A DNA stretch of 63,725 nt, filler included, from Reticulomyxa filosa (Eukaryota > Protista > Foraminifera), in assembly GCA_000512085.1 (NCBI GenBank). It is 20 parts of 20 records of this genome, joined end to end, with 100 filler letters (N's around TTAATTAATTAA, not from the genome) between each part and the next. Parts side by side here need not be neighbours in the genome. Positions count along the whole stretch, not along the records: positions 54,897 to 62,569 come from ASPP01020149.1; 19 more parts are not named here. One strand, written 5' to 3'. The position numbers were made by a program, and so were the translations under genes. The notes under the pieces were generated by a model. The model made no database searches. It had not been told where the DNA came from and was given only the letters and a program-made list of their open reading frames with translations. Of this stretch, positions 54,897 to 62,508 are shown piece by piece; position 1 is the first letter of the stretch, and every line of letters starts with the position of its first letter.

Positions 54897-55477
54897 TTTT
54901 TTTTATACCTCCCCCCCCCCCTTTTTTTTTTTTTTAAAAAAAAACTTTGAACTTTCGAGTTTGGGACAATCGTCTGGATCAATTGCGTGTGGTCGTAAAT
55001 TTCAATGCCGGTGTTGTTTTTGTCGTCCCCTTTCTTGTCGCTTGGCAGCGCCAACTTGGTAATCACGGCGAACTTGGTGTTGGAGGGCGATGGGAAAACC
55101 GTAGACGATTTGATGCTGAAAGACCACGGCGTCTTATGGTATGCCAACAAACCCTTGTCGCTTTTGCTCGTTGTGTCCCTCGCCGGAATACTGATGTACG
55201 AGTCCAACAAAAGGCGCTTCGTTTGCTGTCGGATGTTCCTTTGTGATCGCACTAAAAACACGGATGAGGGAAGCACTGCTGACGAGGACGAGGACGAGGA
55301 CGAAGACGATGACAACTTGCTGGCAGTCTCTTTGTTAATGTTGCACAACCATCCGTTTGCTACCAACGGAACTTGACTCACCTTTTCATACAAAGACTCG
55401 ATTTCGGAAAGCTTTGTGGAAGGAAGCTCCTTCTTCACATTGAGCGAATGGGTTAGTCGTTGCAATGCTTTTTGCAT
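54897..55477 (-). CDS. APEH: Acylamino-acid-releasing enzyme (APEH)-like, N-terminal exon
   Basis: LYEKVSQVP, VRSQRNI, FPSPSNTKFAVI and GIEIYD..LIQTI follow the order of APEH N-terminal propeller motifs (SQRD, SPSG..AV, LEVW). Confidence 0.6.
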
Positions 55478-55739: not shown

Positions 55740-56065
55740 CCCACTGTATAACTGTTTGGTCTACAGAAGATGACACAATCGTATTACCATCTCGTAACAT
55801 ATATATTCCTTTCAATTTTGTATTTCTACAAATTTCACATCCATCAGCATAAGAATGTCTTTTCAATATATGTATAGTCTCTATTGATGCGTAACCAAAA
55901 CACAATTTTCTCCAGATAATAATATAATTTCATCTTTGTTAATTCTGGAAAAGTAATTTAAACATTTTTTGGACATTCACTTGATGTACAATTTTCACCA
56001 GATGGCCAAAGGCTGGTGTCAGAGTCTTCAGACAAAACAATTCAAATTTGAGATATGCAATCAGG
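55740..56065. pseudogene. Degraded WD40 fragments on both strands
   Basis: Minus strand DGNTIVSSSVDQTV. Plus strand GHSLDVQFSPDGQRLVSESSDKTIQI*DMQSG. Confidence 0.65.
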
Positions 56066-56099: not shown

Positions 56100-56703
56100 G
56101 CACCAAAGTGTAATCTTAATTCAATACAATGGAACAGATTGTGTGGGCTCAAATTTTATCCATTTATTTCTTTTCATGGAATATTTGCATATTTCATCAG
56201 TTAGATTACACGACAAATTCCATCCACCAAAAAATATATATTGCCATCGATACACACAAATGCTTACGAATTGGATGATTTAATTGTTGCGCAAGTCCTT
56301 ATCTTGCTAAATCCCAATACATTATTACTTTCATCAATTGTGATTAATAATCCTGTTTTTTCATAAAATAAAACCATTTCATTCAGCGATATTCCATTTT
56401 TTGCAGTTGTCAAATGCATATTGTCCACCAAAAGATAACAAAATGATATCATTTGAATCATTGCTATTCATACACTTCACCACACAGCGCTCAAGTAATG
56501 TTAAATTACTTGGATAAGAGTAAATGTATTTATACTTGTTTTGATGGCATGGTAGGAATAGCAGTTGCTGTTTTTGTAACCCCCTTCCTACAAATGAGAA
56601 TTTCATGCCTGTGAACTATATATTGATCACCGACAAGTGGAGTAAGTAAAGAATTCAAAATCTCAACAAGCGCTGCAGTACCTAAATTTACACTCGTAGG
56701 CAT
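56100..56703 (-). pseudogene. Kelch-like pseudogene with internal deletion
   Basis: VHRHEILIC, CYSYH, IILLSFGG, EMVLFYEKTGLLI and IYFFGG..KYS..NKW match 61185-62306, with stops and frameshifts. Confidence 0.8.
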
Positions 56704-57435
56704 TATATCATTCATTTTATTTCTGAACTTTAACTTTTTCAACAATTTGTTTTTTACCCTGTCTAGTTTTCGGCAACTATTTAAAAATTTACATTTTATG
56801 ATTCATTTGTTGGGTCACCAGCTTTCACGTACAATTGAATACGCCAACAAAGAAAAATGCATTGTTGTTGTGCAACATAATGTGAACGTTGTTTGTCAAT
56901 GCAAAATGCAACGACGTTTTATTTTTTATTTCAAATAAAACAAAATTGTTACCCGTTGCTTACAAAACTAGAAAAAAAAAATCTGAAGAAATCAGACGTC
57001 CACAAAAATAAACGTCGTACGTTTTGCATTTTAACTATTGAAACGGAGTGGTCCACAAAAGAGATTTAAACCTAATCATTGAGTTCGGAAGGTAAAATAG
57101 AATTTAAATAAACACTATATTCTCAAAAAGAAATAAGATGACCGAATTGGAATCCACTGCGTTGCTAATGTATTAATAATTCAGAAAACTTATTGATTAT
57201 CTTTTTTTGGTTTTGGTTTGGAGTCCATCTCATTTTTAAAGCAAGTCATATAAATATGTTTCAAATGCTGATTTTTCTCACTTATTGCGGTGCAGAAACA
57301 AAATTATGCGAAATACGACAAATTGAACTTTAGTAGTGCCCCTTGAAGTTTTGAAAGAACAAACAAAAAGCAAAAAAAAAAAACAACTTCTGTAGTTCAT
57401 TTAGTGTCTGTTTTAAGATTTGAAAAATAGAAAAC

Positions 57436-59393
57436 ATGCCAATTGAGTGCAAAGATTGGCCAACAGATGGTTGGTATTGTGGTCAAAAAGGGAGCAGTGA
57501 CATACATTATGGGGGTATGGGTGTAAACTGTGCTCAATGTGGTAACGGTTGGAAACAGCGAGGCTGGTTTTGTGGCTGTCAGTGGGAAACAAAACAACAG
57601 CTCGAAGATCAAATTAGAGTGTTAGCAAATTCCAGAGCCATTGCAGAGATGAAAGTTTTACTTTTGTTTTTTGTTGTTGTTTTTTTTTTTGCATCAAAGA
57701 ATGAAAATCTTTAAAAACAGGCAAAGGAAAAAGACGAAGAGTTGAAAAGGAACGAAGAAGAGTATAAAAAAAAAATGGAGGAATTGAAAAGAATGGATGA
57801 GGAAAGCGAACAATATAGAAACCAAATACTTCGAGAAGAAAAGGAAATAAATAAACAAAAAGAAGAAGAGCTACGACGTCGAAAAGAATTGGAGCAACAA
57901 CAGCGTGAAAGAGAGGAGGCACTGCGAAAAGTGGAGCCACCAGCAGCTGGTCAAGTATTTGGAATTGTATGTGATTCGAGAGGAAATGGGATAAAGGGCC
58001 TGTCTATCGAATTGTGGAATGATAAGGGAATGATACCTGTAGAATCCGATGCAGAAGGAAGATTTATATATACCAATTTGAGTCCAGGAGAGTACACAAT
58101 TAGAATCGATGATAATGCTTGGACCAAGCAAAATAGAGTCATTTGTATCCCTGATGGTGGCTCCATTACCGAAGAGATTACGTTATCGCGAACCAAGGCT
58201 ACGCAATCTGCAAGTGATACGGAAATTAAAGTTACAGCAGATAGCAAAGCTGATATCACGGTAGCTGCCAACTCGCTTAAAAATTTAGATGGGACTCCAT
58301 ATTTTGGAAAGGTGAATGTGTTTACAGCAACAATCGATGCCACTTCTCCAGCACAAGTGAGAACAATGCCCCATTTCCGAACCAGTATCGATCCAAATGG
58401 TCCTCTCTTAGAAACTGGTGGTGCAATATTTTCGGTATTCACGGATGAGTCTGGAAGACTCTTGGAAGCCACAAATGTTCGTGTGACAATACCTCTATCC
58501 AAATATGACCCGGATATGGGATTATGGTATATGGGCTTGAATGATCGAGTTTGGAGACCACTGAAAAATGTGACGAGAAGATCTGGTGTCCTTTCAGGCA
58601 CATTCTCAGGATCAGGATGGGTTAACGCAGATAAGCGATATCCTCCCAAATGGAGAAATTCAAGATTGACAGACAGAAAGGGAAGAGGTATACCTTTTGC
58701 AACTGTGACAAGTAGCGGAGTGGGGTATGCGAGCAATTATGTAACTAGAACGGATAGAAAGGGATGCTTTCAAATACCAAGTTATAAAGGAAGAGATGTT
58801 CAGTTAGACATTTCGTTGGGTCATGACAAACTTTCAGATTCACTCCAAATTAATCCTTTGAAAAATGAGCCCATTTCATTGGATATTATTATTGCTCCAA
58901 GTCAATCCCAATCTCAAAGTGACGATAATCTTGCCAAGACTACCATTGATCTAGTGCCATTGATACCTGGACCTCAACAACGTCGTGATATCCTTGTTAT
59001 TACCACGAGATCTTTACAAAAGTATGTCGATTTTGCACATCGTATACTTCGTTCCTACGGAAATTTGACTATCATTGGGCAAGATAAATGTAAGTATACG
59101 TATACACCTTAGGGATCTATTTTTTTATTTATTTTTTTTTTTTTACAAAAAAATAAAAAAACGGAGCTGTTCTCAATAAAAAGGAAACTTTTTTTTTTTT
59201 TTTTTTCAAAATAAAAGATATGGATAAAACACACGCATTGGTTGAGCGATTACGTAATCAAGGCGTTAAATTAATTGCAAACGAAGAAATAAAAAACAAA
59301 ACGGTGCCATATGGTTTTTACAGTCGTCGTGATGAATGCCGAAAGGTACAACCCAGGCCGACAATTGTATTTCACTTCGAGCAAGGACAGTAA
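57436..59393 (+). CDS. Multidomain protein: Cys/Trp mini-domain + coiled coil + carboxypeptidase-regulatory/CILP-FAM171-like beta-sandwiches + Alba-like domain (587 aa)
   Basis: Exons 57436-57654, 57721-59089 and 59218-59393 splice in frame through GT-AG introns with no internal stop. Domain calls are by motif resemblance. Confidence 0.8.
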
Positions 59394-59687
59394 CTTTTAT
59401 TTGCAATTCGTGCATTGTTAGTAAAAAAAAAAAACCATTTGAAACTGTTCTCAAATTTCTCCAAAAAAAAAAAAAGTCTGTGCTTTAAATAACGTTTTCG
59501 TTATTTTGAGTATTTTTTTCATTAGTACAATAAATAAATCTTAACTTGAAAATTTTTTTTTTCTAAAACTTGGGAGTCCTTTTTCACTAAAAAACTCAAT
59601 TTTTTTATATTCTTGAAATTGTACTGGAAGAAAGTTATATTTTTTGGACCCACAATTGAGCGTTGTACTAACAGGCTGTGTGAAAGA

Positions 59688-60903
59688 ATGACTACTACAA
59701 CTTCCATAAACACAATCTCGAAACAGAATAGCACGTGCAGCACATATCCCGTAGATTTGATTTGTTACAAAAAAAAAAAAAAATCTCAATTCTATGTTGT
59801 GACGTATCCACTCAAAAAACAAAACAAATAGAGCGAAAAGGAAGCATCATTAATTTTGACGAATTGGATTCGATGCTCTCTATTTATTGGGGATGGATTG
59901 ATGACTTCAACAAAATTATTGCGAAATATGTTTAGTGATAACTTAACTTATTTGCTTTATCTTTTTGAAAAGTGGGAAAAAAAAAAAAAAAAAAAAAAAA
60001 AAGAGCAAATTTAAAACAGGCCAAATACTTTAAGTTATTGCAAATCTTCGAAGGACATTCAGATACAATAAATAGTGTAAAATTTTCACCAGATGGCACC
60101 AAAATTGTTTCTTCTTCTGATGATGGAACTATACGAATATGGAATATTGGATCCACAAACAACAATTAAAATATTGAGAGGAGAAGCAAATGCTATAGAC
60201 AATGCTCAATTTTCACCAGATGGAAATACACTTTTGGTATGCTCAAGAGATGAAATAATCCGATTATGGGATATACAATCTGGCGAAGAAATTAAAAAAT
60301 TTAAAGGACATTCCGATAGTGTCACAAGTGCTCAATTTTCACCAGATGGACAAAGTATTATTTCATCATCATGGGATCAAACAATACGATTATGGGATAT
60401 AAAATCAGAACATGAGATGAAAAGAATACCAGGACATTCACATTGTATAAACGATGTACAATTTTCATCAGGGGGCCAATTACTTGTATCAGCAGGAGAT
60501 GATAAAAAAATTAAAATTTGGAATATGAAAACAACTAAAGTAATACATACACTGAAAGGCCATTCGCATCATGTCTTAAAAGCACAGTTTTCACGAGATG
60601 AATGTTTTGTCGTATCATGCTCAAGTGATAATACATGTCGGATATGGGATGTACAATCAGGAAGAGAATTATTTAAATTGAAAGGGCATTTTCATGTTGT
60701 AACAGATGTGAAATTTTCATCAGATAGTCAAACTGTTGTATCTTGTTCATATGATAAAACTTCGATTGTGGGACGTAAAATCAGGAGAACAAATCCAATC
60801 ATTGGAAGGCCATTCTGAAAATATAACAGGAGTTGATACTGCACCAAATGGTAACATAATTGTGTCATGTTCTAATGATAAGACCATTCGATTATGGGGA
60901 TAA
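59688..60903 (+). pseudogene. WD40-repeat gene with adaptor exon and three frameshifts
   Basis: Repeats of GHS..V.S..FSPDG..I.S.S.D.TIRLWD. Frame breaks near 59873, 60160 and 60760. Family-typical TIRLWG* end at 60903. Confidence 0.75.
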
Positions 60904-61184: not shown

Positions 61185-62508
61185 ATGGGTACAAGTGCTA
61201 CGAAAGCGCAAAAATTTACGGATATGGACGATGCAAGTCCTTTTCAAACTGTAGCTTCTTTGCCAATTCCTCTTCGACATGCGCAATGTGTTGTTCACAA
61301 GCATGAAATTCTCATTTGTGGTGGTTATAATCATAATGTATGCTATTCTTATCATACAGTTAAAAACCAATATAAGCGTATTTGTTCGTATCCAAAGTAT
61401 CTCGAGTTAACTGGACATTATGTTGTGAGACACGTGACTAGCGACAGCAAAAATGACAAGGAAATACTTTTGTTGTCCTTTGGGCAATCTGGATATGAAA
61501 AGAAGTATATATTGGCGATGAGGTATATTAGTGTTTGGGAAAAAGATAAAAATAAGAAATTGAAAAACAAGCACAATAAGTGGCAGTTTCTAACAGACAA
61601 TAACGATCAAGCGATTACCATTGTAGGGAATGAAGACAATTTCGTAGGAGCACGTGCAACAATTGGCGGTGAAAATAAGCACTTGTTGTTTATTACCTAT
61701 TATCCAAATAATATTAGTGTATATAATTTGAACACATGGCAATACGTCAAACATGCAACCTTGCCAGTTGACTCAATACTGATAAGTCATTGCTTTGTGT
61801 CAAAAAACCATAAGAAAAAAAAGTCAAGCGAAATGATGTTATTTAATCAACGTGTGGGACTATCAATTGAATATGATGAAGACAATAATGTGTTTAATTT
61901 TCAAAAGGTACGAGTTTGTAAAACAATTGGACAGCTTTGTTTTTATGGATACGTCTGTGTCAACAATTCCATTTTATTTTTTGGTGGAAAAAATGGTCGT
62001 GGTGCAACTGTAAATGAAGTCTATCAATATTCAATTTCTGATGACAAATGGACAAAATATGAGCAAACTTTACCCATGGCGCTGAGAGATTGTACGGTCG
62101 TATTGAGTGATGATAATGCATTTGTACATATTATCGGTGGGTTTGATGGTGAAAATAAGCTTGCGATACATATGAAAGCTGATGTGAAGAATTGGATTAG
62201 AGGAGAACAGCAATTGATGATTGAAGACCAAGAAATTGTAGATATTGAAAAGATACATATGGAATTAGAAGGAATGAATCACGACTTGGATATTAAAAAA
62301 TTGAAAGTTTTGCAATTTCAAAATTGTTCAGTTTTTTTTGATTTGATAATTATGTCGATGAAAGAATATTGTGATATAAAGGTACAAAAAAACAAAATAG
62401 AAACAAAAAGAAATTGAAAAGATCATTGAATATTGGATGCGTTCATCATCAATTAATAAAATGGGATGGATTCCTGATTTCAATTTCATTGTTTTACGTT
62501 ATATTTTG
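61185..62508 (+). CDS. Kelch-like propeller protein followed by the adaptor-motif exon (continues past the contig end)
   Basis: GG-containing Kelch blades (ILICGG, ILFFGG, VHIIGG..). Intron 62307-62400, then exon 62401-62508 KEIEKIIEYWMRS..MGWIPDFNFIVLRY. Confidence 0.85.

What the first reader, a model, noticed from the sequence alone, without database searches (positions are those of the whole stretch)
57436..59393. Hidden Alba-like domain fused to CILP/FAM171-type beta-sandwiches and a Cys/Trp mini-domain
Seen: removing intron 59090-59217 (GTAAGT..AAAAG) extends the protein with a final exon the ORF track misses. The C-terminus becomes DILVITTRSLQKYVDFAHRILRSYGNLTIIGQDKYMDKTHALVERLRNQGVKLIANEEIKNKTV..KVQPRPTIVFHFEQ. 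Known: eukaryotic Alba domains read roughly IQVSNTKKPLFFYVNLAKRYMQQY..VELSALG..VTEILKNNG..VQKAKIEI, and YVDFAHRILRSY, LVERLRNQG and the last beta strand align with this. Upstream are two transthyretin/carboxypeptidase-regulatory-like domains (GIVCDSRGNGI..ESDAEGRF..LSPGEYTI; LTDRKGRGIPFATV..RTDRKGCF) flanking a CILP/FAM171/bacterial-lipoprotein-like module (ITVAANSL..DGTPYFGKV..MP..LETGG..LWY..W..WVNAD). Those modules are normally extracellular, yet there is no signal peptide or TM helix. Inference: a cytosolic or nuclear nucleic-acid-binding protein built from a repurposed, possibly horizontally acquired, secreted-protein scaffold. I know of no described protein with this architecture.
Basis: partly seen in the sequence, partly recalled or inferred. 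Interest (0 to 1): 0.85.

Follow-up and report, generated by a model that had tools for sequence, protein, structure and literature searches.

The report
Foram ZU5 scaffold with Alba-like tail
A single-celled marine-type amoeba (the foraminiferan Reticulomyxa filosa) has two copies of a gene that joins a protein module otherwise seen on cell surfaces (as in the brain receptor FAM171) to a small end domain that probably resembles the RNA/DNA-binding Alba proteins, a combination I could not find described.

Summary
The gene is real: three exons, 587 aa, in Reticulomyxa filosa. NCBI's model ETO14238.1 already uses the 59089/59218 junction but has a wrong name and another tail. No RNA run was listed, so splicing is not directly shown. 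Two CarboxypepD_reg domains are confirmed. New: the middle module has a ZU5/GAIN fold (Z 10.5 to ankyrin ZU5); with the first domain it forms the FAM171 ectodomain tandem. Bacterial lipoprotein relatives keep the H-F-S/T self-cleavage motif, which this protein has lost. No signal peptide or membrane helix. The Alba call is likely but unproven (about 65%): ESM Atlas features and structure point to Alba; Pfam, HMM, hhalign and my fold of the truncated domain do not, and Alba's conserved glycine motif is degenerate. Horizontal transfer is unresolved. Best reading: an intracellular adaptor with a dead ZU5 scaffold and a divergent Alba-like RNA or partner-binding end.

The parts
57436..57654 (+). 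Exon 1 (73 codons): Cys/Trp mini-domain and start of the long helix
   Evidence: same ATG-to-donor length (219 nt) and GTTTTA donor in the paralog L003
57436..57591 (+). Cys/Trp/Gly-rich mini-domain, 6 Cys, 5 Trp, two W-x3-GW-x-C units, one CxxC and one CxC; probably metal-binding (inference)
   Evidence: dN/dS 0.16 against the paralog; no family or fold found
57655..57720 (+). Intron 1 (66 nt, phase 0). NCBI's model uses a donor 24 nt later and so adds 8 hydrophobic residues; the paralog supports the earlier donor
57721..57930 (+). E/K/R-rich long helix (63% E+K+R; coiled coil or single alpha-helix spacer)
57946..58194 (+). First transthyretin-like CarboxypepD_reg domain (P0001 157-239)
   Evidence: Pfam PF13620 33.7 bits alone; Z 12.6, rmsd 1.5-1.6 A to carboxypeptidase D 5aq0/1qmu
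58195..58647 (+). ZU5/GAIN-like beta domain (P0001 240-390), FAM171 domain-2 type
   Evidence: Z 10.5/10.4 to ankyrin-B ZU5 (4d8o, 6m3q), 10.2 to ADGRB2 GAIN; profile match to FAM171A2 9y6n
58609..58617 (+). Position of the H-F-S/T self-cleavage motif of bacterial relatives, here G-S-G (lost), in the turn before the last strand of the ZU5-like domain
58648..58896 (+). Second transthyretin-like CarboxypepD_reg domain (P0001 391-473)
   Evidence: PF13620 23.5 bits, E 7e-5, below cut-off alone; all-beta in the model
58984..59089 (+). Alba-like domain, first half (predicted beta1-alpha1-beta2)
   Evidence: dN/dS 0.22
59090..59217 (+). Intron 2 (128 nt, phase 1), splitting the Alba-like domain
   Evidence: same sites in paralog, 116 nt there; same junction in ETO14238.1
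59218..59393 (+). Exon 3: Alba-like domain, second half (predicted alpha2-beta3-beta4) and stop
   Evidence: 176 nt, no indels and same TAA in paralog; dN/dS 0.31, also 0.31 in the 26 codons NCBI omits

Best explanation
A functional, lineage-restricted, intracellular adaptor protein. Shown: a three-exon gene kept under purifying selection in two paralogs, with no signal peptide or membrane helix, made of a Cys/Trp mini-domain, a charged helical spacer, a transthyretin-ZU5-transthyretin beta module and a small alpha/beta end domain. Shown by fold: the first two beta domains repeat the FAM171 ectodomain tandem, and the ZU5 self-cleavage residues are gone. Inferred: the uncleaved beta module is a rigid protein-binding, possibly trimerising scaffold (as ankyrin ZU5 binds spectrin and FAM171 forms trimers); the end domain is a divergent Alba that dimerises, with itself or an ordinary Alba, and binds RNA through a basic surface; the Cys/Trp domain binds zinc and a further partner. 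The protein would thus tether RNA or RNP particles to another cell structure.
For: Paralog conservation of both introns, exon 3 and stop. Lowest dN/dS in the two end domains (0.16; 0.22-0.31) against 0.45-0.54 in the beta module. ESM Atlas: top feature hits all Alba (0.86, 185 of 256 shared features) and top two structure rows Alba (TM 0.72, 0.73 over 66-68 residues), SpoVS 0.65. Strand-helix-strand-helix-strand order in the model. Forced alignment to 104 archaeal Albas lands in the Alba register with near-equal length. Net basic domain, K+R 17 against D+E 10. The relative P0003 has a basic tail (13 K+R in 30 residues) in the same place. ZU5 fold Z 10.5; FAM171A2 match E 3.6e-7 through bacterial relatives; FAM171 = carboxypeptidase-regulatory + ZU5-like, trimeric (bioRxiv 10.1101/2025.09.18.675241).
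Against: No Pfam, NCBIfam or PHROG Alba hit at E up to 10. Archaeal Alba HMM gives 3.3 bits, off register, 11 of 1000 shuffles as high; hhalign probability under 1%; reversed sequence scores nearly as well in the forced alignment (9.2 against 10.4). My single-sequence model of the domain without its last strand (pLDDT 63) matched generic alpha/beta folds, not Alba. Exon 3 alone drew Amidase_3 fragments, not Alba. The conserved Alba Gly43 aligns with Asp. No RNA evidence. Location and binding are untested.
Confidence: 0.45

Rival explanations
1. The end domain has the Alba fold but no longer binds nucleic acid; it only dimerises or binds proteins, and the whole protein is a structural or signalling scaffold.
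For: Gly43 motif degenerate and no sequence signal to Alba profiles; P0003 and P0036 carry the same beta module with quite different ends and no Alba, so the ends are exchangeable.
Against: Domain remains net basic and is strongly conserved between paralogs.
Confidence: 0.22
2. The end domain is not Alba but another small alpha/beta domain (IF3-C/YhbY/SpoVS-like or unrelated); the Alba likeness is a chance pattern.
For: All profile searches blank; own fold search finds DsrE-like and Rossmann-like rows only; exon 3 alone gives Amidase_3; shuffled proteins reach 0.8 in the Atlas a third of the time.
Against: Features and structure of the Atlas both rank Alba first, from archaea, eukaryotes and viruses; element order and spacing fit Alba; my model lacked the last strand, which lies inside the Alba sheet (own knowledge), so it could not form the fold.
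Confidence: 0.2
3. The protein is exported without a signal peptide, or works in the secretory lumen, like its bacterial lipoprotein and FAM171 relatives; the Cys residues form disulfides.
For: All five bacterial relatives have hydrophobic leaders with lipobox-like Cys; FAM171 modules are extracellular; NCBI's donor choice would add a hydrophobic patch (KD 1.53).
Against: No leader or membrane helix in either paralog or in P0003; the hydrophobic patch is not kept in the paralog.
Confidence: 0.08
4. Intron 2 is not spliced or the gene is a decaying duplicate; the protein ends at 59112 with half a domain.
For: No RNA run listed; neighbouring WD40 and kelch genes show frameshifts and remnants.
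Against: Canonical sites, AT-rich intron, identical sites and open exon 3 in a paralog with dS about 0.2-0.3 and dN/dS 0.31.
Confidence: 0.05

Closest known systems
FAM171A1/A2/B ectodomain (PF10577; PDB 9y6n, 9y63; bioRxiv 10.1101/2025.09.18.675241)
   Same: Carboxypeptidase-regulatory domain followed by a ZU5-like domain; sequence link through profiles (E 3.6e-7; E 3.8e-4); no self-cleavage motif seen in the aligned stretch.
   Different: No signal peptide or membrane helix; a second transthyretin-like domain; Cys/Trp domain, helical spacer and Alba-like end instead of a cytoplasmic tail; no direct PF10577 hit.
ZU5/GAIN/Nup98 autopeptidase superfamily (ankyrin ZU5, adhesion-GPCR GAIN; Zhang et al. 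2012, PMC3482391)
   Same: Fold of residues 236-390, Z 8.7-10.5, rmsd about 3 A over 120-136 residues; followed by a beta-sandwich as ZU5 is by UPA.
   Different: H-F/L-S/T motif replaced by G-S-G; 7-12% identity; no death domain or 7TM part.
Uncharacterised bacterial lipoproteins with the same three-domain beta module (P0107, P0123, P0141, P0152, P0154)
   Same: Same transthyretin-ZU5-transthyretin module, 29-31% identity, E 1e-10 to 5e-9.
   Different: They have leaders with a lipobox-like Cys; three keep H-F-S/T; different C-terminal domains; none has Alba.
Alba family / Alba-like superfamily (PF01918, IPR036882; Jagadeesh and Vembar 2024, PMC11621453)
   Same: About 90 residues, predicted order of strands and helices, basic charge, Atlas TM 0.72-0.73.
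   Different: No profile hit, Gly43 motif altered, C-terminal position behind beta-sandwich domains; this partner is not among the co-occurring domains listed (thioredoxin-like, TAXi, HHH_5, TULP, RGG) and Reticulomyxa is not mentioned.

Membership tests
Alba (PF01918 / IPR036882) | Match to the Alba profile at the curated cut-off | tested here: not met
   No Pfam family at E up to 10 for P0001:495-570 or the exons; control archaeal Albas score 63-82 bits; own HMM 3.3 bits; hhalign under 1%
Alba (PF01918 / IPR036882) | beta1-alpha1-beta2-alpha2-beta3-beta4 fold | tested here: inconclusive
   Atlas model TM 0.72-0.73 to Alba clusters; own model of the domain without beta4 gives the element order but no Alba match; the complete joined domain was not folded
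Alba (PF01918 / IPR036882) | Conserved Gly43 at the beta2-alpha2 turn and conserved dimer interface | tested here: not met
   Forced alignment puts A-R-G-R-A-I against G-Q-D-K-Y-M, Gly43 against Asp536; the alignment is weak and Gly534 lies two residues earlier; feature from PMC11621453
Alba (PF01918 / IPR036882) | Electropositive nucleic-acid-binding surface | tested here: inconclusive
   K+R 17, D+E 10; archaeal mean 13.8 and 12.3; surface not mapped
Alba (PF01918 / IPR036882) | Dimerisation and DNA/RNA binding | not testable with these tools
   needs experiment
CarboxypepD_reg / transthyretin-like (PF13620) | Pfam gathering score and fold | tested here: met
   51.7 bits against 32.3; Z 12.6 to 5aq0
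FAM171 (PF10577) | Carboxypeptidase-regulatory plus ZU5-like tandem | tested here: met
FAM171 (PF10577) | Signal peptide and type I membrane helix | tested here: not met
   maximum KD19 0.58 in the exons
FAM171 (PF10577) | PF10577 gathering score | tested here: not met
   no hit for P0001; the relative P0152:118-275 passes, 33.3 against 31.2
FAM171 (PF10577) | Trimer formation | not testable with these tools
   monomer prediction only
ZU5/GAIN autopeptidase superfamily | ZU5/GAIN-B beta fold | tested here: met
   Z 10.5 (4d8o), 10.4 (6m3q), 10.2 (8oek), 9.6 (4dlo); model pLDDT about 85-90 there
ZU5/GAIN autopeptidase superfamily | H-x-S/T self-cleavage motif before the last strand | tested here: not met
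   G-S-G in P0001 against H-F-T/H-F-S in P0123, P0152, P0154
CILP | CILP Pfam domain, secreted multi-domain build | tested here: inconclusive
   no CILP hit for P0001; E 0.033 for the first domain of P0036 only
LRGUK (name given to ETO14238.1) | Leucine-rich repeats and guanylate kinase domain | tested here: not met
   neither domain found

The most novel reading that the evidence does not exclude
An RNA-binding, Alba-tipped, trimeric scaffold built from a bacterial self-cleaving ZU5 lipoprotein module that was disarmed and moved into the cytosol of protists; the same module family would be the source of the animal FAM171 ectodomain, and the protein would anchor RNPs in the giant reticulopodial cell.
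Probability: 0.25. Interest if true: 0.75.

Novelty: new variant of a known kind. Interest (0 to 1): 0.52.

Why it matters
It would add a new partner architecture to the Alba superfamily and the first Alba-like protein noted in a foraminiferan in the papers I could search. Independently of Alba, it links the FAM171 ectodomain, called a novel two-domain architecture in a 2025-26 preprint that does not mention bacteria, to a family of bacterial lipoproteins, some with an intact ZU5/GAIN self-cleavage motif, and to leaderless protist proteins. That makes testable whether FAM171 is a dead autoprotease and whether its trimer is ancient. The limits: two copies in one genome, no expression data, no assay.

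Tried and rejected
RNA check: no run listed. As the operators required, the joined 587-aa model was neither searched nor folded; I used single exons and the stored NCBI protein P0001, which crosses the junction but lacks the last strand. Alignment A4 (exon pieces side by side) was not used as a query. Homolog searches with the Alba-like part found nothing. A first hhalign script timed out. Scans for the beta module in metagenome and viral contigs were blank. A tree of eight module sequences put the three eukaryote-like rows on one side with 68/69 support, long branches, no root and no animal rows: no statement on transfer. The Cys/Trp domain matched C2H2 fingers only through tag and CxxC letters, rejected; a motif scan of viral contigs gave chance hits. 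No Rfam RNA in the piece. Chimeric assembly rejected because a second contig carries the same beta-module-to-Alba-like junction. The NCBI name LRGUK rejected.

Full report
Source and gene model. The piece is contig ASPP01020149.1 of Reticulomyxa filosa. NCBI's protein ETO14238.1 (P0001, 592 aa, named 'leucine-rich repeats and guanylate kinase domain containing protein') already uses the 59089/59218 junction, so the exon is not hidden from the annotation. It differs in two places: a later donor in intron 1 that adds eight hydrophobic residues, and an extra intron from about 59313 that replaces the last 26 codons. Residue numbers below are those of P0001; subtract 8 after residue 81 for the 587-aa model.

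A paralog decides between the models. P0002 (contig L003) and P0007 (contig L004) are two halves of one gene: the contigs overlap exactly by 33 nt, and their neighbours differ from those of the window. The paralog has the same exon-1 length and GTTTTA donor, the same GTAAGT donor and AAAAG acceptor for intron 2 (116 nt there, with indels), and an exon 3 of 176 nt without indels that ends in the same TAA. dN/dS is 0.16 in the Cys/Trp domain, 0.54 and 0.45 in the beta module, 0.22 and 0.31 in the two halves of the end domain, and 0.31 in the 26 codons NCBI leaves out (3 synonymous, 4 replacement changes, a small count). Direct proof of splicing is missing: no RNA run was listed.

The beta module. 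Pfam CarboxypepD_reg matches twice, 51.7 bits against a cut-off of 32.3. An AlphaFold2 model of P0001 with 12 sequences has pLDDT near 85-90 over most of residues 160-390 and 70-80 to 450. Residues 157-239 match the transthyretin-like domain of carboxypeptidase D (Z 12.6, rmsd 1.5-1.6 A). Residues 236-390 match ankyrin ZU5 domains (4d8o Z 10.5; 6m3q Z 10.4, rmsd 2.8 A, 122 residues; 3ud1 9.9) and GAIN domains of adhesion GPCRs (8oek 10.2; 4dlo 9.6). ZU5, GPS/GAIN and Nup98 form one self-cleaving superfamily that also occurs in bacterial surface proteins (PMC3482391). The closest relatives over this module are the paralog, a eukaryote-like transcript contig (P0003, 41%), a gene on a C4A4-telomere nanochromosome (P0036, 29%) and bacterial lipoproteins (29-31%, E 1e-10 to 5e-9). 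A profile of three bacterial relatives finds FAM171A2 at E 3.6e-7, one relative passes the PF10577 cut-off, and the FAM171 ectodomain is described as a carboxypeptidase-regulatory plus ZU5-like tandem that forms trimers (bioRxiv 10.1101/2025.09.18.675241). Three bacterial relatives carry H-F-T or H-F-S just before the last strand of the domain, where ZU5/GAIN cleave (own knowledge for the site); P0001 has G-S-G there, and P0003, P0036, P0107 and P0141 have also lost it. The bacterial proteins have hydrophobic leaders; the exons of this gene have none.

The end domain. For Alba: the ESM Atlas ranks Alba clusters first both by features (0.86, 185 of 256 shared; ten of ten best family hits agree) and by structure (TM 0.72 and 0.73 over 68 and 66 residues; SpoVS 0.65); the two count as one source and a score under 0.9 is a lead. 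The predicted order is strand-helix-strand-helix-strand. A forced alignment to 104 archaeal Albas fetched here falls in register, Y-V on Y-V and exon 3 spanning alpha2 to beta4 with a two-residue gap, z 2.0, 8 of 300 shuffles as high, but the reversed sequence scores almost as well. Against: no Pfam, NCBIfam or PHROG Alba hit; local HMM 3.3 bits off register; hhalign under 1%; exon 3 alone draws Amidase_3 fragments; my single-sequence model of the truncated domain (pLDDT 63) matches generic alpha/beta folds only. That model lacked the last strand, so it is a weak test. Alba's conserved Gly43 (PMC11621453) aligns with Asp536. I put the Alba fold at about 65% and do not file the domain as a tested member of PF01918.

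The N-terminus. Residues 1-52 hold six Cys and five Trp in two W-x3-GW-x-C units; no family, solved relative or confident model was found. The motif C-x2-W-P-x2-G-W-x-C occurs, among all proteins fetched, only in the two paralogs and at the C-terminus of P0036, which also has the beta module and a charged helix but in reverse order. The likeness does not extend beyond the motif, so it is a lead. The spacer is a long helix, 63% E/K/R.

How it most likely works. Shown: conserved gene, domain order, ZU5 fold, lost cleavage motif, no export signal. Inferred: an intracellular adaptor in which the dead ZU5 tandem binds proteins and perhaps trimerises, the Alba-like end dimerises and binds RNA, and a zinc-binding Cys/Trp tip sits at the end of a helical arm (0.45). 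Rivals: Alba fold without nucleic-acid binding (0.22), a different alpha/beta domain (0.20), export without a leader (0.08), unspliced or decaying gene (0.05). Horizontal transfer is open: the eight-row tree has weak support, long branches and no animal rows, and the module's presence in animals and other eukaryote-like sequences allows old inheritance.

Novelty. The parts are known; the combination is not in the 2024 Alba survey's list of partner domains, which does not mention Reticulomyxa, and no paper held both 'Reticulomyxa' and 'ZU5'. It is seen in two paralogs of one genome only. Verdict: new variant of a known kind, interest 0.52. No contig taken for human was met or used; FAM171A2 appeared only as a database hit.

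Noticed in passing
P0123, P0152, P0154, P0155 (L133:1169-3283): Bacterial lipoprotein-like proteins with the FAM171-type tandem keep an H-F-T/H-F-S motif at the ZU5/GAIN cleavage position; they may be self-cleaving and are candidate ancestors of the FAM171 ectodomain.
   Followed up: partly
L007:216-1931 (GCA_003202625.1, QFZN01011542.1): Single-gene contig with C4A4-type telomeres (ciliate-like nanochromosome, organism not identified) encoding P0036: beta module, then charged helix, then a Cys/Trp domain with the same C-x2-W-P-x2-G-W-x-C motif, i.e. the reverse order of this gene.
   Followed up: partly
L001:36-1742 (SRR32069676): Intronless, transcript-like contig encoding P0003, the closest non-Reticulomyxa relative: unrelated N-terminal beta domain (C1q-like by eye only, no hit), helix, beta module, and a basic tail instead of the Alba-like domain.
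   Followed up: partly
model residues 238-435 against PDB 8glv chain AE: The ZU5-like plus following domain also matches a chain of the Chlamydomonas doublet microtubule repeat (Z 8.7, 142 residues), another intracellular protist case of such a fold.
   Followed up: no
window 59972-60903 +: WD40-repeat gene whose repeats lie in three frames (ORFs 59972-60169, 60093-60818, 60736-60903): frameshifted or mis-assembled.
   Followed up: partly
window 61185-62508 +: Kelch-repeat gene of the expanded Reticulomyxa type.
   Followed up: partly
window 55960-56060 + and 56379-56745 -: A stop-broken WD40 remnant and a frameshifted kelch-like remnant (by eye; no Pfam hit for the latter).
   Followed up: partly
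window 54947-55477 -: Ser-rich ORF at 44-51% GC near the contig edge, no Pfam hit, not called by NCBI.
   Followed up: no
L008:827-1099 and L009:11927-12202: Two IMG/VR viral contigs carry archaeal-type Alba genes.
   Followed up: no
window 59090-59106 and 59480-59530: The first 17 nt of intron 2 and a block of the 3' region are nearly identical in the paralog while the rest has indels; possible splice or 3' UTR signals.
   Followed up: no
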